A DNA stretch of 64,000 nucleotides, taken from assembly GCA_052426225.1 (NCBI GenBank), contig JBNJNM010000011.1, positions 1,116,001 to 1,180,000 on the forward strand, written 5' to 3'. The notes under the pieces were generated by a model, which had not been told where the DNA came from, did no database searches, and saw only the letters and a list, made by a program, of their open reading frames with translations. Origin of the DNA: Zancudomyces culisetae HAW-14-8 (lineage: Eukaryota > Fungi > Kickxellomycota). Positions 11,876 to 30,081 of the stretch are shown here, piece after piece. The translations under genes were made by a program, and so were the position numbers. The first letter of the stretch is position 1; each line of letters begins with the position of its first letter.

Positions 11876-14800
11876 ATGGATCACGCAAGAGAAATCTCAA
11901 CGTTGTTTAGGACGCTTCCCGTGACATGTTTGGAATTTATCCCCACCAACCATAATCTCGACCGAAAATTCGAAATTCTGCTAGCGGGTGTTGGTCCAGA
12001 ACTCCGCATCTTTGATTTAGCAAGCAAACCAACACACTTTACATCTTTAAAACTTTTACAAGCCCAACGGATTTATGGGATTCGATTCTTTGGTATCCCC
12101 CAACTAGAAAACCAAATATATTACCAAGATATTGCGGTATTTGGAGGTAGACAATATCAGGTTTTGCGTTTGGCTTGGAGGGTTGATGTTGATGTTGATG
12201 TTGGTGTTGGTGTTGGTGTTGGTGTTGATGCAGGAACGGAAAGGAACAGGTATACATTTACGATAAAAAGTGGGCATAGTACAAGTCCACCAGAATCGAC
12301 GGTGGATTCAGGACTTGTAAAATTCGGTTCTGACTGGATTTTCGATTTGAAATATATTCACAATCACGGAAATAAGGCTAGCCACCTGGTTCTGGCATAT
12401 GCGCACAATTATGTGGAAGTTGTATCACTTGAAACATTTGAGGTACTGACCCGCTTCCAAAACTCTGTAAAATGTAATTTATATTGCGCAACAATTCGCG
12501 GTGAAACGTTGGACAACCTAACAATTGCATCTGGAACCTGTTTTAACCAGGTAATCCTGTGGGAGATCAACGCGAATATTGCAAAAAATTCAAAAAAAAT
12601 TGAGCTAGAACCTTCAAGAACGTTGTTGGGCCACGAAGGGGTGATCTTTGGTATCACTTTTAGTCAAGATGGATCTCGGTTGGTTTCCACAAGCGATGAT
12701 AGGACTATTAGAGTGTGGGATATATCCGATACCCAAAGCGGAAAATATGTTTGCTGTGCTGTTTTGTATGGGCATAGAGCTCGGGTTTGGAAAGCCATTC
12801 TTTCTGATGAGTATTTGATAAGCATTTCGGAGGATTGCAGCTGCAGGGTTTGGCTAGCAGTATCTGATGAGGCTTCAAAAGTTGAATATGTTCCTATTGC
12901 AAACTATTCTAATGGTCATTTTGGTAAAAATATTTGGTCAATGGCAATACTAAACACCGAACATGATTTGCTATCGAATGGGGACATCAAAACGCGGAAA
13001 AAATGTATAGTTGCTACTGGAGGAGAAGATGGTGGCATAAAGTTATGGCCATTAGGTGAAATTTCAAATCGATATATTATTGATGAAGAAAAATTAGAAA
13101 AACTCGAGCTAGGGAATCTGCAGTACAGCTCGTCATTGAGTAATATCTTGGTCTCAGAACGATTCGAGTTTCCACACTCAACCGATAACATACGAAACTT
13201 TGTACGTGTTGGAAAACAAAGGCTACTGGTTTTGACTGATCAAGGCTTTTTGTTTCACTACAATGAACAAACTAACAGTTGTAGTGATGACTTGGCACAC
13301 TATAAAAAGTTTTATAGATATGGTGTCATGTCTGCTTCAGATTGTGGAAAGGTTGTTGCAATCGGATGTCTAGATGGAGAAATAAACCTAATTGTGGATA
13401 ACAAAATACAATTTCTGCGAACTCACCATGTAAACGCACATTTGGGAACTCAGATAAGGTTCCTCAAGATCTTTACCAGTAAAAAACGAGAGAATACTTT
13501 TTTGTTGGTTTCAGTTGATGTCAAGGAGAATGTCGTTTTGAGTACGCTAGCTTTGTCGAAAACAAAGTCCATCACTACTACAAATATGTCTCAGCTATTA
13601 TTGCCGAAATTTTCAAAGTTTTCAACAATTGATATTAATGAAAAGTTTGACCTATTAAGCGTTGGTACTGTAAATGGTGCTTTACTCATATTCCACTGCG
13701 ATTCATCTTTTAGATTTAACAATTTAGATAATGATACAAGTAAAATCCATCCGGTAATTAATTGGAGGAGGGTTCACGGAAACTATAATCTTTCAGCGCT
13801 CAAATTCACCGAATCTAGCCAAAACACAGCATTACCTGATATTGACAGTATGACTTGTGAATTATACACTGGTGGCAGAGATGGAATGGTAAACAAGTTC
13901 AGAATTACGATAGCAAACACCGATAGCAATGTTGCACACGAATTGCATAATCTTAGTCTTGGTGATTCGAACGAACCTAAACTGGTGATTTCCGGTAAAC
14001 ATCATACGGAAACGGTCGTTATTGACCGCCATGACAACACGACTACTGGAACTTGTCAGTTAAAAGTTATGTCTATTGAGCAACTTCCTAGTCTAAAAGT
14101 TACCAGCGGATGGGTCGAGAAAATAACTAGCACTACTCACCTGTATTGCTGCTGCTTTTATAAAGGAAACTTTTCCGTCTATAACATGAATAAGCAAGTT
14201 GAAATCTTCTCCATAAAATGCGGAGGTGGTCATCGTAGATGGGAACTGTTCAGTAGTGACGAACTAGACCACATATTCTCGTTTGTCAGAAAAAATGATA
14301 TATTCACATTTAGATACTCTGATCAAAGCAGTAGCATCGGTATTGAAAGCAGCATCGTGCAAAACAGTCTGCTGGGCAAGGAAATCCGCAGCTCTTGTAT
14401 TACATCTGCTTTATCGGAAAACAAGTTTGTGGTTGCCTGCGGTGGTGAAGAAGGGATATTAGCCCTTGCCACAGTTGATCGCTCTGATATTATGCGAGGT
14501 AACTTTGCAATTAGAGATATGCATACCACCGATTCCGGGTATCCGAGTGCCTCTCCGATTTCATTAAATTCATTTATACCTAAAATACACAAAAAGTGCC
14601 ACACTTCTGTCATCAAAAACTTGTGTTGGTTGGACCCAAAGATCCCCGGAACAAATTTCCAGTACCTGCTATCAGCAGGAGGCAGTGAAGAACTCTATTG
14701 TTGGAAAGTATCAGCAGATACAAAATCACTGGATGGAGATTACGCTGATACTCTCGACCTGAATTGCCATTTGGTTTCAAAATGCCCTATAATTTCCTCA

Positions 14801-15649
14801 TCAGAAAGCATTAGAATCACCAGCATAACAACATTTACAATTAATGTTTCTTCGGCTAGTGAGTGTTTTATTGCTTGTGGGTACTCTGATGGGTTTGTCA
14901 GACTTTGGCATCTTGAACTAAATAGTGGTGTCTCAAACGACCAGAAAAACAGATTCAGCCTTATCTCTACATTTTTTAATACCAATTGCGTCTTATCCAT
15001 TGCCAACATGGTCCTAAAAAACAATAATCCAAGCATTAACCAACCCAAGATTTTTATTTTCTTTGGTGATACACTTGGCCGCATCAAGGTTGTAGATGCA
15101 AGCAAAGCTATACAGAGATATATTTCTAATTTTTCAAATGGTTTCGCAAATTCTCAAGAAATTGCGCGGAGCCCTCAAGAGGATCTTCCAATTGTTTACA
15201 ATATCGATCAGGTAGTCCAGAACGGAGTAAATGATATTGATGTACATTTGCTGACGCATCTTTCAAAAATATCTGTTGCCCTCGCTGTTGCGGGTGAAGA
15301 TGACAGCGTCAATTTTTTGGTTCTCTCAATCAACGATGCTGAAGTCAAACCCCTATTTTCCCACAAAGTGCCAAATGCCCACTTTTCATCTGTTCAAAGG
15401 CTCAAATTCGTATCCACAGGCAATCAGCTCTTGGCCATTTCTGTGGCTACTGATCAGCGCGTTGTCCTTTGGCGCCTAGCCATACATCAAAGTCACATGG
15501 ATGTCATCAAAAATCATGGCACTTTTAATACTATAATATCAGATCCTTCGGATATGTTTTTAATCAAAAACACTGGTGAAGACTCGTGTTGTGGTGTAGT
15601 TGTGGGTATAGGTTTAGAACTGTTTGAATTTTCCAAAACTTTACTTTAG
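11876..15649 (+). CDS. WDR6: WD40-repeat protein WDR6/Trm734 (Rtt10), partner of the tRNA 2'-O-methyltransferase Trm7
   Basis: 1257 aa. Motifs LPVTCLEF, IASGTCFNQVILW, GHEGVIFGITFS, SDDRTIRVW, GHRARVW, GHFGKNIWS, CGGGHRRW and TDQRVVLW are characteristic of WDR6/Trm734. Confidence 0.88.
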   Translation: MDHAREISTLFRTLPVTCLEFIPTNHNLDRKFEILLAGVGPELRIFDLASKPTHFTSLKLLQAQRIYGIRFFGIPQLENQIYYQDIAVFGGRQYQVLRLAWRVDVDVDVGVGVGVGVDAGTERNRYTFTIKSGHSTSPPESTVDSGLVKFGSDWIFDLKYIHNHGNKASHLVLAYAHNYVEVVSLETFEVLTRFQNSVKCNLYCATIRGETLDNLTIASGTCFNQVILWEINANIAKNSKKIELEPSRTLLGHEGVIFGITFSQDGSRLVSTSDDRTIRVWDISDTQSGKYVCCAVLYGHRARVWKAILSDEYLISISEDCSCRVWLAVSDEASKVEYVPIANYSNGHFGKNIWSMAILNTEHDLLSNGDIKTRKKCIVATGGEDGGIKLWPLGEISNRYIIDEEKLEKLELGNLQYSSSLSNILVSERFEFPHSTDNIRNFVRVGKQRLLVLTDQGFLFHYNEQTNSCSDDLAHYKKFYRYGVMSASDCGKVVAIGCLDGEINLIVDNKIQFLRTHHVNAHLGTQIRFLKIFTSKKRENTFLLVSVDVKENVVLSTLALSKTKSITTTNMSQLLLPKFSKFSTIDINEKFDLLSVGTVNGALLIFHCDSSFRFNNLDNDTSKIHPVINWRRVHGNYNLSALKFTESSQNTALPDIDSMTCELYTGGRDGMVNKFRITIANTDSNVAHELHNLSLGDSNEPKLVISGKHHTETVVIDRHDNTTTGTCQLKVMSIEQLPSLKVTSGWVEKITSTTHLYCCCFYKGNFSVYNMNKQVEIFSIKCGGGHRRWELFSSDELDHIFSFVRKNDIFTFRYSDQSSSIGIESSIVQNSLLGKEIRSSCITSALSENKFVVACGGEEGILALATVDRSDIMRGNFAIRDMHTTDSGYPSASPISLNSFIPKIHKKCHTSVIKNLCWLDPKIPGTNFQYLLSAGGSEELYCWKVSADTKSLDGDYADTLDLNCHLVSKCPIISSSESIRITSITTFTINVSSASECFIACGYSDGFVRLWHLELNSGVSNDQKNRFSLISTFFNTNCVLSIANMVLKNNNPSINQPKIFIFFGDTLGRIKVVDASKAIQRYISNFSNGFANSQEIARSPQEDLPIVYNIDQVVQNGVNDIDVHLLTHLSKISVALAVAGEDDSVNFLVLSINDAEVKPLFSHKVPNAHFSSVQRLKFVSTGNQLLAISVATDQRVVLWRLAIHQSHMDVIKNHGTFNTIISDPSDMFLIKNTGEDSCCGVVVGIGLELFEFSKTLL

Positions 15650-15823
15650 TATCGGCATTTGTATCGGCATTGGTATATGTGTTTGTATATGTGTTTGTAC
15701 ATACTACTGAAATAGATTTTCTAATGAAACCCGTTATTACTATATTATACAAACCTTTAATTTATTTTCAAATCAGAAGCGAACAAATTGTCAGTGTTTG
15801 AGAATAAGTGTGAATCTTTAATA
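15200..15823 (+). repeat. Direct repeat, left copy: last 450 nt of WDR6 CDS plus ~170 nt of 3' flank
   Basis: Near-identical to 22391-23003 by direct comparison. Confidence 0.97.
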
Positions 15824-16049
15824 TTATATTTTTATTCACCACCTTTGGACAAATATATTTGTGAATAGTAAAGATATTTACTCTTTTTTTAAAAAGTCCA
15901 ATAACTTTTCCAAAACAATCAATAAAAAACTAAAATCATTTGAATGATATGGTGGCATTTTTCAACGAACATTTCTTACAATAGCTTGCTCTTTTTTCAA
16001 AAAAAATAGATTTTTAAAGTTATCTGTATGTGTAATGATTTATTAAAAA

Positions 16050-16272
16050 GTATGTGTGGGATAGCGTCGGACGAGACTAGACTCGTACCCGCCAATTTTT
16101 GGGCTTATCTTCTACAAGAAAGCTTGTTCAGCAGGATTCTGGAATGGGTCATGTGATTCTTTAGGGTTCACATCCATGTTAGTGATCTTCGATCGATCAC
16201 CTTCGGATGAATAGTGAACCTTTATCCTGTGATTGCCGAATCCACGCGGTTCTTAGTTTGCACATAAGACCT
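16050..16272 (+). ncRNA. Candidate structured ncRNA with an Sm-type site (family unassigned)
   Basis: GC-richer patch in AT-rich DNA with four hairpins found by eye, AATTTTTGG at 16094-16102 between two hairpins, and a TTGCAC terminal loop. G-U pairs favour the + strand. Confidence 0.5.
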
Positions 16273-17536
16273 GAAATGTTTTGTTTGAGATTTTAATGAT
16301 TTTTTTATAATTCTTTACTTTGCTGTAACAATAATTTTATATTTGATGTCTTTAAAACTCACCTTGCTTTCAATTATATATGTTCAATATTCCTTTATTT
16401 CCTTGTAATATTTTATAATACTTACCATTAAAAGAAATACTGGGCTTTCTTTTATTATATTAATTTAGTACTTACTAATTATTTGTATCACCTATTTGTT
16501 TGCGATAATGCTGTTTTGTTATTCTGAAATTTACTGTTCCATACCTGTTTTTATTAATAAACCTGATGATATAATCTTAGTTGTAAACTCTAATTTTGTT
16601 GATATACAATTTTATGACTTTATTACTTTTTAGTTCAATACTTTTGCTCAAGCTCATAATTGAAATTCATGATGATATTTTTTCATCGAGAATATAATAT
16701 TTAAAGTTAGTTCTGTTGTTGGTTATAGTATTTTTCAAAGATTTCTTGTTTCCCATTTACTTAGTTTCTTAGGATCCTAAAAGCCAGTTTCAACCGACAA
16801 GGGCATATGCACACATTTTGTGAATAAGAATGTATAAACATTTATGGTTAGGCTGGACTGAGTCTAAAATTTGTTATCTTGTTACCAGATTTTTGATAGT
16901 ATTCGAAACATCCAGATCATACCTCTTGGCTTTTCAATGCATTATTATGACTTGTTTATTTAAATACTCTGAACTTAATTTAGAAAAAGAGCAACGATTG
17001 AAGGAAAATGGTTTAAACAGAATGATTGTGAAGCCCTAGACTTATTTAGAAAAAAATATAGGATAATCTCAACAAATTTTCTATCGGTTGCAGTTAGCAC
17101 TGTCATTAGTCTGGTTTATGAAACGTCTAGAGGGTATCTTCAGTATATCCATTAAAAGTTCGAGAATATATTATTAACTTTAATGGCATTTAAACAAATA
17201 ATATTAAACATTTCAATCGTAATTTATACAAGGATAAAAAAGTTTAAAAATTAATTATGAAAGCCATGAAATAGTCTAACTGAACGATCTAGAATTATGA
17301 TCAATTAGATATCTATGTTTAGTCTTGTCCATCACTTGTATATCCAATGATTAACATTATTATTGTATGTTATTATATATTAAGAACCTAGACAACTCTA
17401 CAAATAGCCATCGCTAATTCTACAAAATAGGCCTGCTGGAAGCATAATAGCAATTATAACATTTGAAGAACATACACAATACTAAAGCTAAAAATGTGTT
17501 TATTTTAATTTGGCTAGAGGAAAAATTTTCTATTCT

Positions 17537-17645
17537 AAAAGTATTTAAGCACGGCCTATTTCGAGATTACAACAAATATACATTGAATTCCCTTAAATTT
17601 CAAAAACCCAAATTAGATTAGAGTAAAAGAAAGAAAACCCTCAAA
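17537..17645 (+). promoter_or_regulatory. Conserved core promoter/5' UTR of secreted-protein paralogue 1 (TATA-like TATTTAA)
   Basis: Closely matches 20752-20861, starting at the TATA-like element and running to the ATG. Confidence 0.6.
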
Positions 17646-18119
17646 ATGATCAAGGCAACAATCCTCAGCACATTAGCTCTTAGCTCTACACTAGCTTACA
17701 GCGTACAGAATGCTAAAAATCAAACCGTACAAGCATCAGGTGAAAAAAGTCTTTCAGATTCCAAGTTTAATAACATGTATTGTGGATGCAGGTACGGACA
17801 TGGACACGGATATGGACATGGACACGGACACGGACACGGAAGGCTGAACCTTGATTTATTTTCAGATGTTAACTTTACCTGTCGTATAGGAACTTTCCAT
17901 CCCATACCAAACAAATGCTACACAGGGCCTAAGTTTGCCGCTTTTACACTGAGTGGTGTGAAGCCTCACAATTATTCTCTTATGTTTTGTAGTAAGCCTG
18001 GTTGTAGAGGTAGATGCATTCATGGGGTTAGAAAATATGGAAGGCGTTATAATCTAAGATATGGTTTGATGGGTGGCTATGCTTCTTCTTACAAGTGGGT
18101 TATTCCTTTCAATGGTTAA
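17646..18119 (+). CDS. Small secreted Cys-rich basic protein with a His-Gly repeat (effector/antimicrobial-like; possible beta/gamma-crystallin-like fold)
   Basis: Signal peptide MIKATILSTLALSSTLA, YGHGHGYGHGHGHGHG tract, and a Cys pattern shared with the paralogue at 20862. Confidence 0.85.
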   Translation: MIKATILSTLALSSTLAYSVQNAKNQTVQASGEKSLSDSKFNNMYCGCRYGHGHGYGHGHGHGHGRLNLDLFSDVNFTCRIGTFHPIPNKCYTGPKFAAFTLSGVKPHNYSLMFCSKPGCRGRCIHGVRKYGRRYNLRYGLMGGYASSYKWVIPFNG

Positions 18120-20751
18120 TCATACCAGTTTAGTGTATTTCTTTATTAGATGTTTGAATAGCTGAATAAATATAAAATTATTCCATTTGAGTTCAAATGT
18201 ATTTTAAATAAATTATTCACAGACCAATACCGTTATATAACAGCTTATCTTCAGTTTTTTAACAGTGGTATTACTGTGGTTACTCCTAGAGATTGTTTGT
18301 TATTGATAGCATTAATATTAATATTATCATCCTGTCTTCATTTTAATTCCTAAACATATAATATGGAAGGATGAACTTGAACTTATTATTTTTATCATAA
18401 ATCTCTTCTATAATATTTGCACCATATTTAATGGAGTCAGTGGATACATTATTACATTAAATTGGATAAACTTAATATTTGATTCTACAGAATCGAAAAG
18501 TATATAAAGGTATATGTAAAAAAAATTAGCTAGAGGCTTTCCGTTGTATACGCACTACACTAAATATAATGTGGAGAATAAACGCTGATTTTAATAATAT
18601 CCACAAAGTACCTTTCATTCAAAGTATGATTAATCTTCAGAATGAGGGTTAAGTTTTCAATTTTCAAGTTGATATCACTATATAAATTAAGTTCAATTTC
18701 GCATTAATTCATAATTATATTGAAGGCTTTAATTACAACGTGCATCATTGTCCGCTTTAAGATGTGTTTAAAATAGTAAAATATTGGAGTTGTATTCGTC
18801 AATTCAAAATATCCAAAAGGCTAAAACTAAATCCAATTATAAAAACAAGTATCAAGAAAAGTATGATGATGTCTTTATAAAGAAGAATTCTTACAATGTT
18901 AATAGCTTTTCCCACAATTAAGTTTTTTTTCTTTGTCTAGAACACTTAATATATATTAATCAAAGTATTAACAGTCATCGAAAATATACAGATCGTTTAT
19001 TCTAATGACAATAAACCTAATTTTTTATAACCAAATAACTTTATGAAATATAAACTACTACGGATCACGTTGACAAATACCGAAAAGGATCTTTAATAAG
19101 CATACCATCTAGCTTTCATAAAGATAGTAGATAATTAGTCTTCAATATTCACTAAAATTTAGAATACTCTATTCAATCCATAAAAAAAAGTAATAACTTC
19201 CAAGCCATCAAACATGGAACACTGAATCAGTTTTAGCTTGAACCCACTTTGGACTCGTCGGGATGCAAAAGCAGGATCAATAAGAAAACACCAATCTAAA
19301 CATATAGTTAATTCGACATATGTAACTATGTGGGTCTATGGGGCTACCACAACATTCAACACTAAATCACAGGTATTTCGACAACGAACATTTACTTTCA
19401 ACTGAGTAGGCCCTGAATTCAAATATAATTCAACTCGGTCTATAAATCAAATTAATAATTTTTACCATTGCAACGACACTTGTACATAACCATTATTATG
19501 TTTTTTTGGTTTTGCACTTTCAATAAAGTACCAAAATATATTTGAATTATTATTTAAATGGCTGCAATAAAAACACTGCAGAATACATTATAAAAGGTAA
19601 AGAGTAAAGAGAATGATGTTGATATTAGTATTCAAACATTTACCATAGATTTTTCTAGCTAGTTTGTTTACATGCGTTTGGTCTACAAACATACACTAAT
19701 TGATATGATAAGAAATGATAAGATGGTTTTAATGCGTTGAGAAGTCAATGTATAAAACAACTATATGATTTTAACTGAGTTGAAGTGTTTGTGTGCTCAA
19801 ATAAAGTTGTACATTAACTCGTTTAAACATAGTGTATTCTACGCATGAAAAGCTCGACTTATATTTTACATAAACCAGTTTTTTCTCACCTTCATTGTTC
19901 GAAATGTAACAGTGTTACAAATACACCACGTTCCTCGTACCTATTCATGTTACCAACCATGAGAGTCTCGAAGGATTTTATTAACAATAATTTATTTTTA
20001 TTTTTTGAATACAACAATTTCATAAACAATTTTTTGTGGTTTTCAAACAAATAATAAGCAAAAAATATATTAGTCAGCTGAGCCGAGCCTTAAGAGTAGA
20101 AGTTTATTGGCCTAGAAAATTATGCTATATATTATTATAAAAATTATTGTATTATTTAAACACATCTAGATCAACAACATCAACCTTGTCTAGTATTGTG
20201 TATATCTTAAAGTTGACTTGCACAGTAAACTTCAAAATAGCCGAGATGCAATAATAGAAAAACAGTTATGTTAACTATGTAAATTAAAATTTTAGACATT
20301 TGCCAATAAGAAAAACATATTGCCCTTGCGAATTCACTTGTCTTTACTGTAAAGCTGTCCGGATTATTTTTAATTTAATAATTTCAAAAATGAACGTTTA
20401 AAATATGAAAAACGAGTGTTTTTGTAGTTACTGAATTATATGTCCAGATATAGACTAGAAATGGATACATTTTTTCCACGAATGAATAATTAAACTCTTT
20501 TTCGGAGATACAACAAAAACTAACTTAGCATGATCTAGAATGAAAACCAGTAAATAATTTATTTAATGACACGTTCATATTATAAAAATATGAAAATCTA
20601 GATACCTTATGTAATTAATTTGGACTATGAAGTTAATTGCAACTTTAGTAGAATAATAATGATATAAACAATTTTACAATTACCAGTTTCAATACCAGTG
20701 TGTCAACACGTTTATATAGTGGTATAATTTTAAACAAATCCCTAACCTGTG

Positions 20752-20861
20752 AAAAGTATAAAAGGCACGACCCATTTCGACATTACAACAAACATACATT
20801 GAATTCTCTTAAATTTCAAAAACCTAAATTAGATTAGAGTAAAAGAAAGAAAACCCTCAAA
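20752..20861 (+). promoter_or_regulatory. Conserved core promoter/5' UTR of secreted-protein paralogue 2 (TATAAAA)
   Basis: TATAAAA about 100 nt upstream of the ATG; closely matches 17537-17645. Confidence 0.6.
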
Positions 20862-21305
20862 ATGATCAAGGCAACAATCCTCAGCACATTAGCTCTTAGC
20901 TCTACACTAGCTTACAGTGCACAGAATGCTAAAAATCAACCCGTACATGTATCAGGTGAAAACAGTATTTCAGAAGCCAAGTTTAATAGCATGCACTGCG
21001 AACCCAGAAGAATGAAAGTTCACTTGTTCCATTACAGCTTCTACAAAGAATACAAAGGTACCTATGATATAGAACCAAACAGATGCTACGCAGCGCCTGA
21101 TTTTACATCAGTACGACTTAGCATACCGGATGATAAGGGAGTTGCCTTCAAGGCTTGCAGAGATAGTAACTGTTCAGACAACTGCTATATCTTTAGAAAT
21201 CCAGGAATCCAGATTGATGACATATGGTGGTATGTTAATAAGGGATATTCAAAATCGTTTTCTTGGGTTAGTCCACACAGTAACTCCATGAATTTGAACG
21301 AATAA
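20862..21305 (+). CDS. Small secreted Cys-rich protein, paralogue of 17646-18119
   Basis: Identical signal peptide. Shared pattern LF...GT(F/Y)...PN.CY..P.F....LS...C....C...C...GY..S(Y/F).WV.P. Confidence 0.85.
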   Translation: MIKATILSTLALSSTLAYSAQNAKNQPVHVSGENSISEAKFNSMHCEPRRMKVHLFHYSFYKEYKGTYDIEPNRCYAAPDFTSVRLSIPDDKGVAFKACRDSNCSDNCYIFRNPGIQIDDIWWYVNKGYSKSFSWVSPHSNSMNLNE

Positions 21306-22387
21306 TTAGGATTTGTTAAAGTTTGAACTATTTAAATTTTATAGATAGATAATTAATTTCAAGTCACAATTTTAAATAAATGACTTAAAGATTCCACTAG
21401 AAATTCAAAATTGAAGTTGGGAGTGAATATTTTAATATTACTTTAGACAATGTATTAATGTATTAAAGACGGAGAAATGGCATGTTAACATCACAAAACG
21501 TTCGGTGTGGTATTCAAGAATTTATCAATTTAAGTATTATTATGCTTACTTCGATACCCATCCTGCTCATTTCATTACCATCTCATAACTGCAAGTCAGC
21601 ATTGGGTAAAATTAATGGGTTAGGAAAAAAAAGATACGAGTTTAGATTTATATTCTAAGTATATTGTGTATATTTGAGTTTAACTCCACTCCATCTTGTT
21701 TTTTTGTTTAGACACTTTAAAGTATTTCCAAAACTTTAAAAGCATTTTAACCAAGAAAATATCTAGTAAAGAAATTATCAAAATGGGCGGGTTATTGAAA
21801 ATGATACTACGTTTTTGGGCTATTAAACTCAATTCTATTGAGCTATGGCTTAACCGTATACTAGACTAAATTAAATTTGGCTTCAATATTTAATTTTATT
21901 GAAGCTTAATATGATCAATCTTAAATCTGATATCGATTTTAAAAGTATTTGAAGTTGGCTAAAGCATATCTTGTCAATGAACATTAAATATATCAGGAAA
22001 ATTTGTAATTTATATTGAAAGTTGTTGTAAAGTGTGTTATAGCAAATTTCAAAGAACATTAGGACTGATCTAGATACTATTTTTCACTTTAAAATGTATT
22101 TATTTATCACTAAGATTACCCTACCGATGAAGGTCTAGCTTTAATTACATTTTGAATTTAAATATCAAACATTTAAAATTTTAATACAAGTTGATTGCTG
22201 TAAATACTATGGCAGTTATGATATCCGTTAAAACAACATCTATAAATTAAATACGTAGTAAGTAGTAGCCTTCAGTTAATAATATATCCTAAACCTATTG
22301 TTCATTAAGCTTATGGATGGTTATATTTAAATAAGCTATGGATCAGTACTGCTATAAAACCAATCTAAAATCAAACTAGAGATATTC

Positions 22388-22840
22388 ATGAATATCGATC
22401 AGGTAGTCCAGAACGGAGTAAATGATATTGATGTACATTTACTGACGCATCTTTCAAAAATATCTGTTGCCCTCGCTGTTGCGGGTGAAGATGACAGCGT
22501 CAATTTTTTGGTTCTCTCAATCAACGATGCTGAAGTCAAACCCCTATTTTCCCACAAAGTGCCAAATGCCCACTTTTCATCTGTTCAAAGGCTCAAATTC
22601 GTATCCACAGGCAATCAGCTCTTGGCCATTTCTGTGGCTACTGATCAGCGCGTTGTCCTTTGGCGCCTAGCCATACATCAAAGTCACATGGATGTCATCA
22701 AAAATCATGGCACCTTTAATACTATAATATCAGATCCTTCGGATATGTTTTTAATCAAAAACACTGGTGAAGACTCGTGTTGTGGTGTAGTTGTGGGTAT
22801 AGGTTTAGAACTGTTTGAATTTTTCAAAACTTTACTTTAG
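22388..22840 (+). pseudogene. Duplicated 3' fragment of WDR6 (150 aa ORF with a junction-supplied ATG); right copy of the direct repeat (22391-23003)
   Basis: Differs from 15200-15649 at only three positions I could find (TTG>TTA, ACT>ACC, TCC>TTC). Confidence 0.85.
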
Positions 22841-24029
22841 TATCGGCATTTGTATCGGCATTTGTATATGTGTTTGTACATACTACTGAAATAGATTTTC
22901 TAATGAAACCCGTTATTACTATATTATACAAACCTTTATTTTATTTCCAAATCAGAAGCGACCAAGTTGTCAGTGTTTGAGAATAAGTGTGAATCTTTAA
23001 TATCATATATTTTTACCATCATCCTGTTAAAAAATGTATCTCATTCGGTTGTTATAGATTCTCTACCCTAGCCTTCATACAGGCCCTCATATCATACTAT
23101 CCGATCGCTGTTAGCTTCTTTTTGTTAGATTGGAAGCCTGACAACAAAATTTCATATTAAGCTCTAGAGATATAATGTAAAGAGGTGTGCAGGAAAAAAA
23201 GATTCCAGAAACAATAGTGCTAAACCTGTTTTTTTGCAATGCTGTATTTAATTAAGAAAAACAAGTATGTGATTGTCGATTGAAGAGGAAATGCAAATTC
23301 TCAGCCATACGAGCAGCAAAATAGTTACAGAATCAGGGTGTGAATATGAAGAAAAGACAGCAAGATTGGGTTTAGAATATATTAATCCCTTTAGGGTTTG
23401 AACGATTCTGTTGATAATGGATGACAAGTTTTTTTTGTTTTTGGTGCATTTTCGGCCTGAAATACATTGCTAATGTGCATACTATTTCTCTAAACCGGCT
23501 TTTTAAGTAAAGTTAGTCGCGTTTGCTTTATTTGGTTTGGCCAAGTGGTGTGTTGGTATTCGAAACAATAGAATATTCCTAGTGAATGACATTTTTATCC
23601 TCATCACTTTGTGTTAGAACACTGAGTATTCGATAAGTAGACTTTTGAAGACGAGGATTTTGGATATGCAGTCATCACATTTCTGAGAAAAACACACAAT
23701 CACGTCAGAATAATAAATACTTGTGATACAACAGTCAATAATACCATCTTTAAAACATAATATATCTACACACTGAGCCAAGAGTGTCGATACAATTGTC
23801 ATTTTATTTCCAGTATTTTTTATTTCCAGTATTTTAATATATTTGTATTTTGCTCCTCTATACCATCACTTTTATTTTTGTTAGATGAATTTATTAAATA
23901 AATATCGCATAAAACTTTATACCATCACACCAGGTAAAAAGGAATTGGAAATATAGAACCACTACAGTATACAGAATATTACTGGCATACTTTGGGTTGT
24001 CAAACTAAGATCGAACACCACTAAAACCA

Positions 24030-24482
24030 ATGACAACAATACTACCCGCAAACTCAAAAATGCCTGGTAGAGTATCCATGAGAAAGACCAGAACACTCAT
24101 AACTGTGGAAAAAATAAAAAGTTTTGTAGTGATGATACAGAGATCCGAACAAAACCGAAAAATAATCGAGACTTTGGATATCTCTGGGACAACCCTAAGA
24201 ACATTAAAAAAAAGATACTTTAATGGCGAATTTAGCAATTTAAACAGTATTCAGGATCATCATTTGAGAAAACAATACAAAAAAAAAGATAAAAGCAGGA
24301 TCAAAGCTATGGTTGCTGCTGAGGTAGCCGCAAATCCAAGAATCAGGTTAAGTGATTTGGTAGCTGTGGGTAAAAAATATGGATTTCACTTTTCGCTTTC
24401 TACATATTCAAGGGTTCTTAAAGAGATGAGATACCTGAAAAGAGATATGGTGAGAGTCCAGTTAGATCAACACCCAGATTAG
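24030..24482 (+). mobile_element. Tc1/mariner-IS630-type DNA-binding (double HTH) ORF without a DDE catalytic domain
   Basis: RKIIETLDISGTTLRTLKKRY (HTH1) and ANPRIRLSDL...GFHFSLSTYSRVLKEMRYLKR (HTH2, resembling the 'xSxSTISRxLxxxGxxxK' pattern). The ORF stops where the DDE domain would begin. Confidence 0.65.
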
Positions 24483-24600
24483 TTTATAGTGAACACGAGC
24501 TTTACCATCGATGGCTTCAATTTTGAAGTACATATCTTGTTTATTTAACGCAAATAGTATATAATCTTATTTTTTTACCTATAATAAAACAACCGATAAA

Positions 24601-25734
24601 CTAATAGTTATTAGTAAAAACAAAAATCTCCTTTCTACCACTGGTAAAAGTGGAAGTAACTGCATTTTGCACTTCCTGGATATCAAGTGGCTTCTCAGAG
24701 CTGCCAGAGCCCGAAAACCAGTTTATTGGTGTGGTGACTTGCTCTTTTAGCTCACCCTTCTCCATCATAGTCATAATGTCATCCCACATCTCCAACCATT
24801 TTGCTGGTGTGTTCTTTTTGTACCATTTCGATACCCAGTAACCCTTAAATGTTATATCCTTGAAGATCAAAATGGGCGCGGAAGCCGGCATTGGTTGTTT
24901 GGACATGCCTCCATAGGTTGCTATAACACCTTCAGGTTTCAAGTGTTTTACCATCTTCATGGCCTGAGGACCACAAACACAGTCTAGAGCCAACCTGACC
25001 GGCTTGTCTGCAAGAAGTGCGACAACCTCTGGGCTCTCCAAGTCCTCCTCTTTGACCACTATGTCAGCACCCAATCCCTTCAAAAATGACTCGAGCTGGT
25101 CAAAGTTTTCGCGTCCTCGAACAACATTGACTGTGTGGTATCCCCAGCGTTTTGCCAGTTGGATTATAATTTGGCCTACACCACTGTTGGCTCCGTTTTG
25201 AATGACGTAGTCGCCCTTTTCCAGCTTTACAATGTCTAAAAGCATTCTGTAAGCGGTGGATGCGTTGACTTTGATGGATGCAATCTGGGTGGGAGATAAA
25301 CCATGTGTGTTTTTAAGCACAATAACTTCGTTTGGTGAAACGTGTGTGTGTGTTGTCCAAGCACTTGCTACCGGTGAGCTCATAAACATGACCCAGTCAC
25401 CAACCGCAAAGTTTTGCTGCGAGATGGATGCAACCTTGCTGCCAATTTCAAGAACTCTTCCAATTGATTCATTTCCTCCAATGGTGCCAACTAATTTCTC
25501 TACACCACCTTCAGCTGAATTCGACTTTACTGTGAACTCGGTTCTATCCTTGGGAAGTGGGTATACACCTTGGACTACGTTCACATCTGAAGGATTGATT
25601 GGTGCCACAAAATTCTCTATCAAAATCTTGTCCTCTGGGAGTGCCTCTAGCTTGAAGTCATATACTTTGATTACATCTTGTGGGTTTCCGTGCTGAGTAT
25701 AGATAGCTGCTCTGCCCCATTCTGGTTTTACCAT
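24601..25734 (-). CDS. ETR1: Trans-2-enoyl-CoA/ACP reductase (MECR/Etr1; MDR superfamily)
   Basis: APINPSDVNVVQGVYP, VNASTAYRML, IQNGANSGVGQ, TYGGMSKQP and IFKDITFKGYW. Confidence 0.93.
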   Translation of the reverse strand: MVKPEWGRAAIYTQHGNPQDVIKVYDFKLEALPEDKILIENFVAPINPSDVNVVQGVYPLPKDRTEFTVKSNSAEGGVEKLVGTIGGNESIGRVLEIGSKVASISQQNFAVGDWVMFMSSPVASAWTTHTHVSPNEVIVLKNTHGLSPTQIASIKVNASTAYRMLLDIVKLEKGDYVIQNGANSGVGQIIIQLAKRWGYHTVNVVRGRENFDQLESFLKGLGADIVVKEEDLESPEVVALLADKPVRLALDCVCGPQAMKMVKHLKPEGVIATYGGMSKQPMPASAPILIFKDITFKGYWVSKWYKKNTPAKWLEMWDDIMTMMEKGELKEQVTTPINWFSGSGSSEKPLDIQEVQNAVTSTFTSGRKEIFVFTNNY

Positions 25735-26982
25735 TTTGAATACACTTGTTTTTTCCTTTTTTCTTTTCCGAGTAAAGTAAAGAATAGATACTATTACAGA
25801 TAGTAGGTTTGGATTTTGTTTATTTTCAGATGGAGTATGGTATTTAATTGCGTTTATATATGTTTTTTGTTCAGATTTCTTTGTCTTTTTAATTTTCCAG
25901 AAGTTTTAAAATGTGAAAATCAAGCTTTTATGGGATATTAATCCACCCATTGATCGTCAAATCACGGCCAAGTAACCAGACGAAGATTTCGAAACAAAAA
26001 GAACAATTGAAAAAGCTTATGCTAGTTTTTATACAATTTTTTTTCAATTTCAGCCGCATTCTATGTCCATGAATTACTAAGCAGTTTCGCACGTGGAATT
26101 TAATCAAATGAATCGTTTGAGGTTCGTAAATATTTTATTTTATTTCATTTTATTTTTCAGGTAAGGAAACCACATTGTCTGGAATCTCCTCTTTCTTTCC
26201 ACAGTCTCCCAGAAAACCTCCAATAATTACAGGAATCACCTTATAGCAATAATGTGTTTTATGAGATAAACTTAATAGCTGGTTTAAATGGCGGTAGATG
26301 CTTGGCACAGCTACAATCCCGTAACAAGGTGCCCATTTTGCTCCTGTACACTTTATGAATTTTACTATTTCAAGTCCGGAAAAAATCCCATCCTGCTTCA
26401 GCCGTTCTAATTCTTCCAATAGTGAATAAACTAACATCAAGTTCACATGGGCTCCCCTCTCTGGCCGAGGTACAAAATATTTGTAAAAACCCTGCTAGTG
26501 TTCAGGATATATGCCTTTTTTTAGTACTGTCTCGTATTTTATTGCTACTACTCAATACAGCGAGCAAGCTAGAATGAAATGATAACAACACTAGAAGTGT
26601 ACTTCTACACCTTGGTTGGCTTTGGCTTTGTAGTTTTACATCTTTGGGTTTGTTAAAAACCGACTGTAACATTAATATCCGTTCGAATAAGCATGGTTAC
26701 GTTTTAAATCAAACTGTGCTGCCCATTTTCCTATTAGCGCGGGAATGCAAGACTTGAACCAAAACCAAAACTTTTTTTTTCCAGGGGTTGATTGGCTAGA
26801 TTTGTTTTTAGTGCATGTTTTTAATGCATGTTTTCAATGCATATACGATTTTTTTTTTGAAGATTCGCACTTTTCAAAGTGAATAAACTTTATCCACCTT
26901 AGCTCCACCCTTCCAGAGTTTTGTAGTTGTTGCAGTATTACTCGAGAGAAAATCCACAATATCACCACAATAAGAATAAAAA

Positions 26983-28134
26983 ATGATACTTGAAAACTAC
27001 AGTGACGCGCGTTTAAATCTCCCACCGGAACTAAATTATCTCGAGGAGGTCAAAAACAGCTGTACCGAATTGGTACATTGCTGTGACAATAAATTCGAAT
27101 TGAACTTTAAGGACTACATTAAAAAAATCGAGGTCAGCACTTTCACTCAGCACGTAAAAAGCTATACACATTGGTGCGATAGATTTCCTTTTAAATTCGA
27201 CACGGCAGCCGCAGAGATTAATTTTATGATTATTGTCGAAATGTTGACTGGTGTATTTGGCTACCAACCCGATGAAATATCAGCTAAACTGGGTGGTGAG
27301 ATGGATCAATTTATATTGGCAGGGTGTATTTCTCTTTTTTTATCATACACAGAATTAGACTCAAAGATTCTGCGAGAACTAACGGTACTACAGATTTCGG
27401 AAAATTTCAGGATTCCGCTATCAAAAGAAGAACCAGCACTTAAGGATCCGAAGACTGGTGAATATATTAGTGGAATGACCATAATGAAGCCTACTGTTCT
27501 ACAACCCTTGGCTAAGGGTATTGTAAATGTATTGAATGGAGTAGGTAAAATACTAGACACTCTTGGCAGCGCAACTGTAGGAGATTTGATTGTAAATAAA
27601 TTCAAAGATACTACCAGTGGAAATGACGTGGTAAAATTCTTGGTAAATACATTCCCGTATTTCAATGATAGTACAAAAATTGAAATAGACGGTGGAGAAA
27701 AAGTAGTTAGATTAAATTTATTTTCTAGTGCGACAAGGGTGTGCTTGAACTTACACAGGAACCACACCAAGTTATTCAACTTTAGCGATGTTGACAATTT
27801 TCTTGTCATCCTTCCTTTCACCTATGATTTTTTGTATACCCAAAAGATAGGCATCTTGTCGTTGAATGATAATAGGTCGGGTATCGATAATACCAACTTG
27901 CTGGCATGCCAGAAATCGATGTACGCCACGAACTTGTATATCAGTATAAAATTAACCGAATATTACAAGAGTATGATGTGCTGTGCTCAAACACCAGTAC
28001 AAGAATCAAATATTTCAGCCGAACCATCTTCAAGTGCCACAGTTGCTGCAATTGTACCTTACAACTGGTTTATTTTTTGGTATTCATATGAAAAAAGCAT
28101 GAAAGCAGGTGGCGATGGCTCTATTTATATTTAG
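26983..28134 (+). CDS. Divergent queuosine-salvage hydrolase-like protein (QNG1/C9orf64/DUF2419 family)
   Basis: Collinear similarity to the family: EEVKNSC, FPFKFDT..AEINF, QISENFRIP, PLAKGIVNVLNGVGKIL, LVNTFPYFND, FNFSDVD. Catalytic motifs appear eroded. Confidence 0.6.
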   Translation: MILENYSDARLNLPPELNYLEEVKNSCTELVHCCDNKFELNFKDYIKKIEVSTFTQHVKSYTHWCDRFPFKFDTAAAEINFMIIVEMLTGVFGYQPDEISAKLGGEMDQFILAGCISLFLSYTELDSKILRELTVLQISENFRIPLSKEEPALKDPKTGEYISGMTIMKPTVLQPLAKGIVNVLNGVGKILDTLGSATVGDLIVNKFKDTTSGNDVVKFLVNTFPYFNDSTKIEIDGGEKVVRLNLFSSATRVCLNLHRNHTKLFNFSDVDNFLVILPFTYDFLYTQKIGILSLNDNRSGIDNTNLLACQKSMYATNLYISIKLTEYYKSMMCCAQTPVQESNISAEPSSSATVAAIVPYNWFIFWYSYEKSMKAGGDGSIYI

Positions 28135-28291
28135 TTTACGCTTTAGATTCTAGAGTAAACAGGAAAGCAAAAATCAAACTTGCTTTTCAGGGGAATTATA
28201 GCCTCGTATTTTAGTAGCACCTCAAGAAATCACGGCTTGTTATTTATTTAGATCAAAGTACCATACAAAGGATTATAAATATAAAGTGGGT

Positions 28292-29426
28292 TTATTCAGA
28301 ATGCTGAAACATATTGTACATTTTGTTGTTGACTGAAATATATAACGAAGTATTTTGATAATAACTGGGGCTTATGTTTTGAATGTTGTTAATTATACTA
28401 TCAATGAGATGGGCTCTTCCTACATTTGCACTGACCGAACCAGCATCAAAGTTTACGTTGATTATATGAACATGGAAGTGGTAATAAGATGGCAAATAAT
28501 GAACAAACATCATAATATCAGATTCAGTGATTCCAGGATATCTACATTTGATTGTTTCCATTGACTTGTGCTTGATGTTTTTCAATAGACCGACATGTTT
28601 TGACGTCAAATCACGCAGTGATTTTATCGATCTATCATTTACCAAGGCAACAAGGTACAACGTTTTGAGAGTGATGCCATCCCACTTGCTATCTGGGAGT
28701 AAAACAAATCCTTCATTTGGGTCGGTATCCTTATAAACCACCCTATCAACCTCGGCCTTTCCTTCAAGAATGTTGTATACCCAAGATGTGCGACTTAGAT
28801 CTTCACTTTCTATATATTTTTTTGTAACCAGTTTGTATAATTCTGGTGTTTCCTCGAGGTACTTTTTGGTATCACCCATGTATTTGTCAATATGTTTTTG
28901 AGTAGCTGGATGAATCATCATAAACTTGGTTTGAGGCTCATAGCTCTTGGTAATACCATCAGAATCCTCGATATCTGTTCTGAATAAACAACCTTCAGCC
29001 CACCCGTAGATATCGTTCTCCTGGATATTTTCAAAGTGTGTAGATTGAATAATCTTTTTGTTTAATCGCGAGATATCAAACTTGAAATGAATCCGTTCAG
29101 CAATGAGTAACGCCTGGCCTTTATCACCCTCGACGCCCTCTAGGTGACCCAAAAACACGATTCTCTTTGTGCTTACATCTATTTGTTTGAATAAACACAG
29201 TATTAATGAATCTGGAAAAAAATATTTCTCCAAATGAAGATGAGGATAGGTGCTCTTTTTTAAACGCAAATAATAACGATAGTAACATAATTAATAAAAA
29301 CAACTTGAATGTGAAGCTAGTTTGAATAAGTATTTTTTTATTAAACTGAGCTGGAATTTTACCTTCATTTATGATTTGCGTGGGAACAAAACTGTGTAGC
29401 TTTTTGATGATACTTTGGTTTTCCAT
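28292..29426 (-). CDS. DCS1: m7GpppX diphosphatase (scavenger decapping enzyme DcpS); exons 29426-29363 and 29178-28292
   Basis: HIT motif HYLPSYYHFHVHI, plus ENDIYGW, HPATQKHIDKY, WVYNILEG and LLPDSKWDG. A GT...AG intron at 29362-29179 joins MENQSIIKKLHSFVPTQIINE to DVSTKRIVFLG in frame. Confidence 0.93.
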
Positions 29427-30081
29427 GCCTGTATGCTCGAAAAAATATATAATATTGATTCTATTTTAATAGTTTTTATATGTAGGAGAGAGAAAGGCGT
29501 GTATATTTGCTAGTTACTGTTTACTGTCTACTATTTGTTGTTTATGGTCTCGTAGGTTAGACTTCTTTTGTACAAATTCTTAATCGTTTAGTTGTCTAGT
29601 ACGTTTTAATTGGTGAAAGTCATAAGAACGGTTGTAAAGTAAACAAATTGAAAAGATGTGTTTTTCCCTCCTTTTTTTTGATTCCAGGTACTACTCTTCC
29701 AAATAAAGCTGTTTAAAAGTCATAAAATGCTAATTAACGGAAATGGATATTGTAGCTACTATTGGCTGTTTTCAAATATCGGATCATTGTGTAGCGAATA
29801 ACAACGTGACTCTGGAATCTAGAAATGAAGCAGCATATCAACATTATCCACCCCCCTAAAGACTGAGAAGTAAAGTACATTTATTTTGAAAAATAATGAT
29901 TCGTGTGTAGAAACAGGTATTAATCGACGAGGATATAAATCATAGTAAAATATAAAACAAAAAAAATAAAACACAGTGCGAGTGAAGGATAATGTGTGCC
30001 ATAAAACAACAGATGAAAATGATTTGAAGGCAAATCAAGATATTGAGGATCGGGAGAAGGACATGGGCTTTTTCTAGGCTA

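What the first reader, a model, noticed from the sequence alone, without database searches (positions are those of the whole stretch)
15200..23003. AT-rich accessory island bracketed by direct repeats of a housekeeping gene's 3' end (genomic-island-like architecture in a fungus)
Seen: 15200-15823 and 22391-23003 are near-identical, with three substitutions in 450 coding nt and a 12-nt repeat-unit indel plus a few substitutions in the 3' flank. Between them lie ~6.5 kb of very AT-rich DNA with no housekeeping gene, only two effector-like secreted paralogues and a structured RNA candidate. The left WDR6 is intact and the right copy is only the 3' end. Inference: this is the geometry produced when a circular DNA carrying a gene 3' end integrates by single crossover (attL/attR-like), and recombination between the repeats could excise the cargo leaving one intact WDR6. 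It may be a recently mobilised or presence/absence effector cassette. No integrase is seen inside it, and ordinary segmental duplication is an alternative.
Basis: partly seen in the sequence, partly recalled or inferred. Interest (0 to 1): 0.8.

Follow-up and report, generated by a model that had tools for sequence, protein, structure and literature searches.

The report
Gene-end repeats kept alike by conversion
In the mosquito-gut fungus Zancudomyces culisetae, a 0.63-kb copy of the end of the WDR6 gene sits 6.6 kb downstream of the real gene end, across a small cluster of secreted-protein genes. The two copies look young only because gene conversion keeps them alike, so this is an old, recombination-prone local duplication and not a freshly inserted mobile island.

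Summary
Window 15200-15834 and 22391-23015 are direct repeats, 96.7% identical, and they are the only two copies in the genome.

They bracket 6.56 kb that holds two secreted paralogues (SP1, SP2) and a decayed small ORF.

The genome is Z. culisetae. By matching statistics, the assembly is taken to be the HAW-14-8 PacBio HiFi assembly. The independent Illumina assembly of strain COL-18-3 has the same arrangement with identical junctions. So it is not an assembly artefact, and it predates the split of the two strains.

The decisive result comes from the variable sites in the repeat:
- 17 sites group by genome: both copies in one strain share a state that both copies in the other strain lack.
- Only a 2-nt indel at the 3' edge groups by position.

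That pattern is concerted evolution by gene conversion. Near-identity is therefore not evidence of recent mobilisation.

An inner repeat pair, the 5' regions of SP1 and SP2, has produced a recombinant COL-18-3 contig that lacks SP1. Part of the cargo is thus presence/absence polymorphic.

Four things were not found:
- an empty-site allele;
- an integrase or transposase;
- terminal repeats;
- a second copy of the cargo.

How the structure first arose remains unresolved. The kind of structure is ordinary and the interest is modest. Other first-stage notes of this scan report bracketing direct repeats elsewhere in this genome; none of them was checked here.

The parts
11876..15649 (+). Intact WDR6 (tRNA 2'-O-methyltransferase regulator) ORF, 1257 aa
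   Evidence: Single ORF. WD40 and beta-propeller Pfam hits. Full-length matches (86-100% coverage, about 28% identity) to WDR6 of Mucoromycota, Zoopagomycota and Glomeromycota.
15200..15834 (+). Repeat A: the last 450 nt of the WDR6 coding sequence plus about 185 nt of 3' flank
   Evidence: It evolves in concert with A'.
15835..22390 (.). Bracketed 6.56-kb segment ('cargo'), mostly non-coding and AT-rich, unique in the genome apart from the family-gene parts
   Evidence: No Pfam hit in 9 further ORFs, apart from one sub-threshold DUF6533 match at E 0.046. No WDR6 remnants. No tRNA or Rfam hit.
16086..16310 (-). Decayed copy of a 73-codon ORF family (start codon lost, one frameshift, premature stop). 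The family often lies beside SP genes near contig ends.
   Evidence: Alignment with 14 copies. Intact ORF in L038 1465-1686 minus strand. Frame analysis. At least 141 hits in the genome.
17537..17777 (+). Inner repeat B1: promoter/5'UTR, signal peptide and start of the pro-region of SP1
   Evidence: 92% identical to B2. Crossover substrate in the COL-18-3 contig L055.
17646..18119 (+). SP1, a 157-aa secreted protein with a (GH)n insert; a member of a family with at least 143 hits in the genome
20752..20993 (+). Inner repeat B2 (5' region of SP2)
20862..21305 (+). SP2, a 147-aa secreted protein. The mature domain is predicted to be a single beta-gamma-crystallin-type domain.
   Evidence: 99% identical to Z. 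culisetae AX774_g5422. AlphaFold block-mean pLDDT 83-96 over residues 51-140. All listed top PDB matches are beta-gamma-crystallin-type domains or whole crystallins, best E 3e-3.
22391..23015 (+). Repeat A': a copy of the WDR6 3' end
22388..22840 (+). 150-codon ORF on A'. Its ATG lies immediately upstream of the junction, and it is annotated as a hypothetical protein in COL-18-3.
23016..24029 (.). Spacer between A' and the next gene. It holds a dispersed 47-50-nt motif at 23867-23916.
24030..24482 (+). Single-copy 150-aa ORF with a weak Tc3-type HTH match. It is not a repeated transposon.
   Evidence: Pfam E 1e-3, below the cut-off. One copy in the genome.
24601..25734 (-).
   Evidence: ADH_zinc_N. 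A 74% identical paralogue on contig 7.

Best explanation
This is an old, strain-shared local rearrangement in Zancudomyces culisetae. A 0.63-kb copy (A') of the WDR6 3' end lies on the far side of a small cluster of lineage-specific secreted beta-gamma-crystallin-like genes. The copy and its parent (A) are kept nearly identical by repeated non-reciprocal recombination, that is, interlocus gene conversion.

Shown:
- The arrangement and both unique junctions exist in two strains assembled by different technologies.
- Within each strain the two copies share substitutions that the other strain lacks.
- The inner repeat pair (the SP 5' regions) behaves the same way, and it has generated a crossover product that deletes SP1 and its spacer.

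Inferred:
- The outer repeats are a standing substrate for the same kind of crossover. Such a crossover would pop out the whole cassette and leave an intact WDR6. That product was not seen.
- The intact 150-codon ORF on A' is a by-product of conversion from the functional gene.
- The three- to four-fold excess of between-strain divergence inside A and A' reflects old paralogue differences fixed in opposite directions, or conversion-associated change.

The founding event is unresolved. Option (a), about 50%: a module of subtelomere-type family genes was inserted just downstream of WDR6 with a long target duplication. That could happen by template switching, by fill-in of a staggered break, or by homologous integration of a circle. 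Option (b), about 35%: a later short dispersed duplication of the WDR6 end was inserted into an already resident cluster.
For: - The repeat is real and has only two copies.
- The organism was identified through SP2, 99% identical to Z. culisetae AX774_g5422.
- The assembly statistics match the HAW-14-8 PacBio HiFi assembly (27.2 Mb in 26 contigs, largest over 5.2 Mb; PMC12611240).
- COL-18-3 contig LSSK01001089.1 is collinear with window 12257-31284 at 98.6%, through A, cargo and A'.
- The junction sequences are identical in three COL-18-3 contigs.
- Site patterns: 17 variable sites group by genome and one 2-nt indel at the 3' edge groups by position. In the coding part, A vs A' differs at 0/449 sites in COL-18-3 and 3/449 in the window, against 11-12/449 between strains.
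- Between-strain divergence is 4.0% in A and 3.4% in A'. It is 0.88% in the rest of WDR6 and 0.3-1.9% in the cargo. Fisher p = 2e-6 and 0.003.
- Contig LSSK01000968.1 joins B1 to B2 within a stretch of about 120 identical nt and lacks window 17778-20751.
- The cargo genes belong to large families: at least 143 SP hits and at least 141 hits of the 73-codon ORF, many near contig ends and adjacent to each other.
- No integrase, transposase or repeat ends are present.
- No other copy of the cargo above 77% identity exists.
Against: - No reads could be examined: no run was listed. Junction support therefore rests on two assemblies.
- The COL-18-3 assembly is from short reads. Identical A and A' coding parts there could in principle be helped by repeat collapse, although its flank differences between A and A' were resolved.
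- Only two strains (four contigs) were sampled, so an empty-site allele may exist elsewhere.
- No close outgroup has conserved synteny (Smittium simulii), so the order of events cannot be polarised.
- The interleaved pattern of the six A-private sites in the window strain is not explained by simple conversion tracts.
Confidence: 0.7

Rival explanations
1. One reading: an integrase-free mobile island. A circular DNA carrying the WDR6 3' end plus the cargo integrated by a single homologous crossover. It can excise again through the repeats, giving a recently mobilised presence/absence effector cassette.
For: - The geometry is exactly that of an ends-in single crossover: intact gene, cargo, then a 3' fragment continuing into the downstream flank.
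- Recombination between direct repeats does happen in this locus: the inner pair produced a deletion contig.
- The cargo is built from family genes typical of contig ends.
- Other first-stage notes report bracketing repeats elsewhere in this genome (unchecked).
Against: - It is not recent. The junctions are shared by two strains, and the identity is explained by gene conversion.
- No empty site was found in the four contigs.
- There is no second copy of the cargo.
- There is no recombinase.
- Three other SP loci in COL-18-3 show no high-identity bracketing repeats.
- The geometry is equally produced by template switching or by a staggered break.
Confidence: 0.12
2. A' is kept because it is a gene. 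The 150-codon ORF, with an ATG created at the junction, encodes a free-standing C-terminal WDR6 fragment under purifying selection. That selection, rather than conversion, keeps it like its parent.
For: - The ORF is intact in both strains, and the ATG at the junction is conserved.
- It is annotated as a gene in COL-18-3.
- Few non-synonymous differences separate it from the parent: 1 in the window strain and 0 in COL-18-3.
Against: - Selection cannot make both copies share the same 7 synonymous and about 6 flank substitutions per strain. Only sequence exchange does that.
- There is no expression evidence.
- A 150-residue piece of a beta-propeller is unlikely to fold alone (inference).
Confidence: 0.08
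3. Assembly artefact: a haplotype join or false duplication in the long-read assembly.
For: The roughly 3% divergence with microsatellite indels resembles allelic differences. COL-18-3 holds two or three slightly different versions of this locus.
Against: An independent assembly of another strain, made by another technology, has the same order and the same unique junctions without gaps. There are only two copies and no alternative contig in the window's genome.
Confidence: 0.02
4. A' is a 5'-truncated retrocopy of the WDR6 mRNA 3' end, inserted by a retroelement's reverse transcriptase.
For: The copied piece is a gene 3' end including the likely 3' UTR. The genome holds about 3 Mb of retroelements (PMC12611240).
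Against: There is no poly(A) tract at the 3' end of A' and no target-site duplication around it.
Confidence: 0.03

Closest known systems
Segmental (dispersed) duplications under interlocus gene conversion, with non-allelic homologous recombination between them (concerted evolution, as described for duplicated genes, LTR pairs and low-copy repeats)
   Same: Paralogues within a genome are more alike than orthologues between genomes. The junctions are shared across strains. A deletion product arises from crossover between direct repeats in the same locus.
   Different: One partner is the working 3' end of a single-copy housekeeping gene and the other is a fragment. The fragment can therefore feed changes into the gene: 5 amino-acid differences between strains fall in the last 150 residues, against 12 in the preceding 981.
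Ends-in single-crossover integration of a circular DNA by homology (yeast integrative plasmids; re-integration of extrachromosomal circular DNA)
   Same: The product geometry is the same: intact gene, insert, then a truncated duplicate that continues into the native downstream flank. Pop-out by repeat recombination restores the gene.
   Different: No circle, no empty site and no second integration were seen. The structure is old and fixed in the sampled strains.
Bacterial genomic islands integrated at the 3' end of a gene, with attL/attR direct repeats
   Same: Direct repeats derived from a gene 3' end bracket accessory cargo, and the gene stays intact.
   Different: There is no integrase. The repeats are 635 bp rather than tens of bp. 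The composition is the same as local intergenic DNA. The host is a eukaryote. There is no sign of excision.
Fungal cargo-carrying elements (Starships, Cryptons) and LTR retrotransposons
   Same: A block of accessory genes is bounded by direct repeats.
   Different: There is no tyrosine recombinase, no gag/pol and no terminal inverted repeats. The repeats are host-gene sequence, not element ends.

Membership tests
Duplicates under interlocus gene conversion (concerted evolution) | Paralogues within a genome share derived states that are absent from their positional orthologues in another genome | tested here: met
   17 sites group by genome and one 2-nt indel groups by position. A vs A' is 0-3/449 within strains and 11-12/449 between strains.
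Duplicates under interlocus gene conversion (concerted evolution) | The duplication predates the split of the compared genomes (same junctions) | tested here: met
   The flanks on both sides of A and A' are identical in the window and in COL-18-3 contigs L054, L055 and L059.
Duplicates under interlocus gene conversion (concerted evolution) | Crossover (NAHR) products between the direct repeats | tested here: inconclusive
   Met for the inner pair B1/B2: contig LSSK01000968.1 lacks window 17778-20751. Not seen for the outer pair A/A'.
Site-specific genomic island (attL/attR type) | An integrase or recombinase gene in or beside the island | tested here: not met
   No Pfam recombinase or transposase domain in SP1, SP2 or nine other cargo ORFs. 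The neighbouring HTH ORF is single-copy and below the Pfam cut-off.
Site-specific genomic island (attL/attR type) | An empty site or excised form exists in some genomes | tested here: not met
   All four available contigs (one from the window's genome, three from COL-18-3) carry A'. The WDR6 product is on one COL-18-3 contig only. The sample is very small, and reads could not be tested.
Site-specific genomic island (attL/attR type) | Composition or ancestry foreign to the host genome | tested here: not met
   GC of 26-33% matches other intergenic DNA in the window. The cargo genes belong to families native to this genome and to Harpellales.
Homologous single-crossover integration of a circle | Product geometry: intact gene, insert, then a truncated duplicate continuous with the native flank | tested here: met
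   The geometry is not specific to this mechanism.
Homologous single-crossover integration of a circle | A circular intermediate, or reads with the order cargo end, A, cargo start | not testable with these tools
   No sequencing run was listed.
LTR retrotransposon / Starship / Crypton | Element-encoded gag/pol or tyrosine recombinase, and element-derived terminal repeats | tested here: not met
   The repeats are WDR6 sequence. No inverted repeats of 40 nt or more. No such domains.
Processed retrocopy | A 3' poly(A) tract and a flanking target-site duplication | tested here: not met
   Sequence at 22380-22391 and 23010-23040.
Beta-gamma-crystallin superfamily (for the cargo proteins SP1 and SP2) | A double Greek-key beta-sandwich domain | tested here: met
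   The model has block-mean pLDDT 83-96 over residues 51-140. All listed top PDB matches are beta-gamma-crystallin-type domains or whole crystallins (IPSE/alpha-1, spherulin 3a, N. crassa APP, nitrollin, protein S), with TM-score by target 0.5-0.66 for single domains and best E 3e-3. No Pfam sequence match.

The most novel reading that the evidence does not exclude
The bracketing repeats may be more than a scar. They could be the working parts of an integrase-free cassette system. In that reading, blocks of subtelomere-type secreted beta-gamma-crystallin genes pop out as circles through flanking host-gene repeats and re-enter by homology. Z. culisetae would then gain, lose and move gut-interaction genes as units. 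The several other 'direct repeats bracket a cargo' notes in this genome would be further instances.
Probability: 0.08. Interest if true: 0.75.

Novelty: new member of a known kind. Interest (0 to 1): 0.3.

Why it matters
This is a clean natural example of why near-identity of flanking repeats cannot be read as recency. With only one genome the island looks freshly inserted. A second strain shows that it is old and homogenised by conversion.

It also shows that a dead fragment can exchange sequence with the end of a single-copy housekeeping gene. That part of WDR6 differs three times more between strains than the rest of the gene.

For the biology of the fungus, the locus documents copy-number change by repeat recombination in a very large, Harpellales-restricted family of secreted beta-gamma-crystallin-like proteins. 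These are plausible players in life in the insect gut.

Tried and rejected
- Reads: the look-up of sequencing runs listed no run for window 14000-23999. Junction depth, empty-site reads and circle reads could not be examined.
A small substitute was run on three COL-18-3 contigs around other SP genes. It found no high-identity bracketing repeats, only an old tandem duplication at about 70% identity and about 8.8 kb spacing in L065.
- Synteny in relatives: the nearest available WDR6 (Smittium simulii, 28% identity) has different neighbours, so it is uninformative.
- Decayed full WDR6 duplicate under the cargo: no remnant was found by tblastn or sensitive blastn.
- Homology continuing beyond the 3' edge of the repeat: not significant.
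- Transposon reading of the HTH ORF at 24030-24482: it is single-copy with a sub-threshold Pfam hit.
- tRNA or known RNA as an integration target or cargo: none found.
- Structured-RNA reading of 16050-16272: rejected in favour of a decayed 73-codon ORF on the minus strand.
- Searches of earlier findings by words: one was malformed and one was blank.


Full report
**Observation.**
The repeat is present as described. Window 15200-15834 and 22391-23015 align at 96.7% over 637 columns. A search of the window's whole genome (27.1 Mb, 25 contigs; the window is contig 11, 1116001-1180000) finds exactly these two copies.

The left copy is the last 450 nt of an uninterrupted 1257-codon ORF plus about 185 nt downstream. 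The ORF has WD40 and beta-propeller domains, and its best database matches are full-length WDR6 proteins of early-diverging fungi.

The right copy starts sharply at 22391 and carries a 150-codon ORF whose ATG lies just upstream of the junction. The copies differ at 3 of 449 coding positions (two synonymous, one S->F). In the flank they differ by a few substitutions, a 12-nt microsatellite-unit indel and a 2-nt indel. Homology does not continue significantly past the 3' edge.

**What lies between.**
The 6.56 kb is 26-33% GC, apart from one window at 37% over SP1. Other intergenic stretches of the window are similar, so the composition is not foreign-looking. It holds three recognisable elements.

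- **SP1 and SP2.** SP1 (17646-18119) and SP2 (20862-21305) share a 241-nt 5' region at 92% identity (17537-17777 vs 20752-20993). They are 42% identical overall.
- **The SP family.** They belong to a family with at least 143 six-frame hits in this genome, many close to contig ends. A profile search of 1.84 billion representative proteins found only 30 family representatives. Of the ten whose source was looked up, seven are from Zancudomyces culisetae, one from Smittium mucronatum and one from Furculomyces, plus one weak archaeal hit. Pfam is blank.
- **The SP fold.** An AlphaFold model built on 19 paralogues is confident over the mature domain. Every listed top PDB match is a beta-gamma-crystallin-type domain or a whole crystallin, though with weak E-values.
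- **The 'structured RNA candidate'.** The stretch at 16050-16272 aligns with 14 other copies in a codon-like pattern. It corresponds, on the minus strand, to a 73-codon ORF that is intact elsewhere. In the window the start codon is lost, and there is a frameshift and a stop. That ORF family has at least 141 hits and often sits next to SP genes near contig ends.

The rest of the cargo has no match elsewhere in the genome above 77% identity, apart from the repeat A/A'. It has no Pfam domain in nine further ORFs, apart from one sub-threshold DUF6533 match (E 0.046). It has no tRNA and no Rfam family. It has no inverted repeats of 40 nt or more and no trace of further WDR6 sequence.

**Identity of the genome, and a second strain.**
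SP2 is 99% identical to a Z. culisetae protein. The assembly statistics of the window's genome match the PacBio HiFi assembly of strain HAW-14-8 (PMC12611240). This match is an inference from the statistics.

The older Illumina assembly of strain COL-18-3 (PMC5026252; GCA_001969505.1) contains the locus on three contigs:

- LSSK01001089.1 is collinear with window 12257-31284 at 98.6% and runs through A, the cargo and A' without gaps.
- LSSK01000968.1 starts inside A, carries A', and lacks window 17778-20751.
- LSSK01001583.1 covers from 21368 rightwards, including A'.

The three differ from one another by about 0.1-0.8%. Two assemblies of two strains, made by different technologies, therefore agree on the order and on both unique junctions. 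That makes an assembly artefact very unlikely. It also means the arrangement predates the divergence of the strains.

**The decisive comparison.**
I aligned A and A' from both strains and classified the variable sites.

- At 17 sites, both copies of the window strain share one state and all COL-18-3 copies share another.
- Only a 2-nt indel at the extreme 3' edge separates A from A' in both strains.
- In the coding part, A vs A' differs at 0/449 sites in COL-18-3 and 3/449 in the window strain. Between strains either copy differs at 11-12/449.

Because the junctions are shared, independent duplication is excluded. The copies have exchanged sequence since the strains split, which is concerted evolution by gene conversion. 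The 97% identity therefore says nothing about the age of the structure. The intact ORF on A' needs no selection to explain it.

The inner SP repeats show the same signature at one site.

Between-strain divergence is 4.0% in A and 3.4% in A'. It is 0.88% in the upstream 2.9 kb of WDR6 and 0.3-1.9% in the surrounding non-coding DNA (Fisher p = 0.003 and 2e-6). Seven of the twelve coding differences are synonymous and five change the protein.

My reading is an inference. Either older paralogue differences were fixed in opposite directions in the two lineages, or conversion itself added changes. On either reading, the fragment has influenced the sequence of the working gene.

One caveat applies. 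The COL-18-3 copies come from a short-read assembly. However, that assembly resolved flank differences between A and A', and all three contigs agree on A'.

**Recombination products.**
LSSK01000968.1 follows the SP1 upstream sequence into the inner repeat. Within about 120 identical nucleotides around the start codon it switches to SP2 sequence. It is a crossover product between the inner repeats and lacks SP1 and the 2.6-kb spacer. Part of the cargo is thus presence/absence polymorphic, either within COL-18-3 or among its haplotypes.

I did not find the corresponding product of the outer repeats. The exact WDR6 product and the exact 150-residue product occur only on the contigs already described. 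All three contigs that carry the downstream dehydrogenase gene also carry A'.

**How it most likely works.**
- Shown: the locus is an accessory gene cluster nested in two pairs of direct repeats, and those repeats recombine.
- Inferred: the outer pair can in principle delete the cassette and restore a plain WDR6 locus.
- Not supported: a dedicated mobility mechanism. There is no recombinase, there are no element ends, there is no second copy and no empty site.

The founding event cannot be resolved with the data to hand. The cargo's content (a decayed 73-codon ORF followed by SP genes) mirrors modules found near contig ends. This favours an ectopic copy of such a module having been inserted just downstream of WDR6 with a long target duplication. 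That could occur by template switching, by fill-in of a staggered break, or by homologous integration of a circle. A later short duplication of the WDR6 end into a resident cluster is nearly as likely. A retrocopy is unlikely, since there is no poly(A) tract and no target-site duplication.

**Limits.**
- No sequencing run was listed, so no read-level test was possible.
Three other COL-18-3 loci showed nothing comparable.
- The nearest relative with a WDR6 gene has no conserved synteny.
- Other first-stage notes report bracketing direct repeats elsewhere in this genome. I could not check any of them, and they are not evidence here.

**Verdict.**
The interpretation as a recently mobilised island is not supported. 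The structure is a strain-shared local duplication under gene conversion, around a copy-number-variable cluster of secreted beta-gamma-crystallin-like genes. It is a new example of a known kind and of modest interest.

Noticed in passing
window 16050-16320 (minus strand): The first-stage 'structured ncRNA with Sm site' is a decayed copy of a 73-codon ORF family (MSGLMHKLK...). In the window copy the start codon is lost, and there is one frameshift and a stop. The family has at least 141 hits in the genome. One hit (contig 10, 1471891-1472070) lies in a 1577-codon open frame, so the family may derive from the N-terminus of a large, possibly retroelement, protein.
   Followed up: partly
window 17646-18119 and 20862-21305; loci L004-L046: The SP family consists of a signal peptide, a pro-region that often ends in a run of basic residues (Kex2-like), and a mature domain of about 90 residues with four conserved Cys. 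That domain is predicted to be a single beta-gamma-crystallin domain. There are at least 143 hits in the genome, many near contig ends. Outside Z. culisetae, the ten representatives whose source was looked up gave only Smittium mucronatum (a three-domain protein) and Furculomyces.
   Followed up: partly
window 23867-23916 and 54300-54346: A 47-50-nt AT-rich motif recurs at 85-97% identity in at least 40 places across the genome. Its function is unknown; it could be a promoter element or a miniature element end.
   Followed up: no
window 52313-53422 and 54721-55803 (minus strand): Two tandem paralogues of about 360 aa, likely Kre2/Mnt1-type mannosyltransferases by motif recall (not scanned). 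They share a 965-nt core at 97.5% identity (52397-53361 vs 54781-55745). This is another local duplicate that may be under conversion.
   Followed up: no
L057, L058, L059 (COL-18-3 contigs LSSK01001089.1, LSSK01000968.1, LSSK01001583.1): The short-read COL-18-3 assembly holds three versions of this locus that differ by about 0.1-0.8%, one of them with the SP1 deletion. This suggests heterozygosity, heterokaryosis, polyploidy or a very recent duplication in that strain. The window's genome has a single version.
   Followed up: partly
window 15200-15649 vs L054 2944-3393: The last 150 codons of WDR6 differ between strains at 12 codons (5 amino-acid changes). The preceding 981 codons differ at 26 codons (12 amino-acid changes). 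The repeated part of the gene therefore evolves about three times faster.
   Followed up: yes
L054 1330-3393: In the COL-18-3 annotation, WDR6 is called as a 687-residue product although the contig covers the whole 1257-codon ORF region. This is probably why the word search did not return a Z. culisetae WDR6.
   Followed up: no
L065 3657-4802 vs 12521-13643 and 5456-5718 vs 14087-14345: Around another SP gene in COL-18-3 there is an old direct duplication at about 8.8 kb spacing and about 70% identity. It looks like an eroded tandem duplication of a subtelomere-type module.
   Followed up: no
window 24030-24482: A 150-aa ORF with a weak Tc3-type helix-turn-helix match is single-copy in the genome and 99.8% conserved between strains. 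It looks more like a host gene than a transposon remnant.
   Followed up: partly
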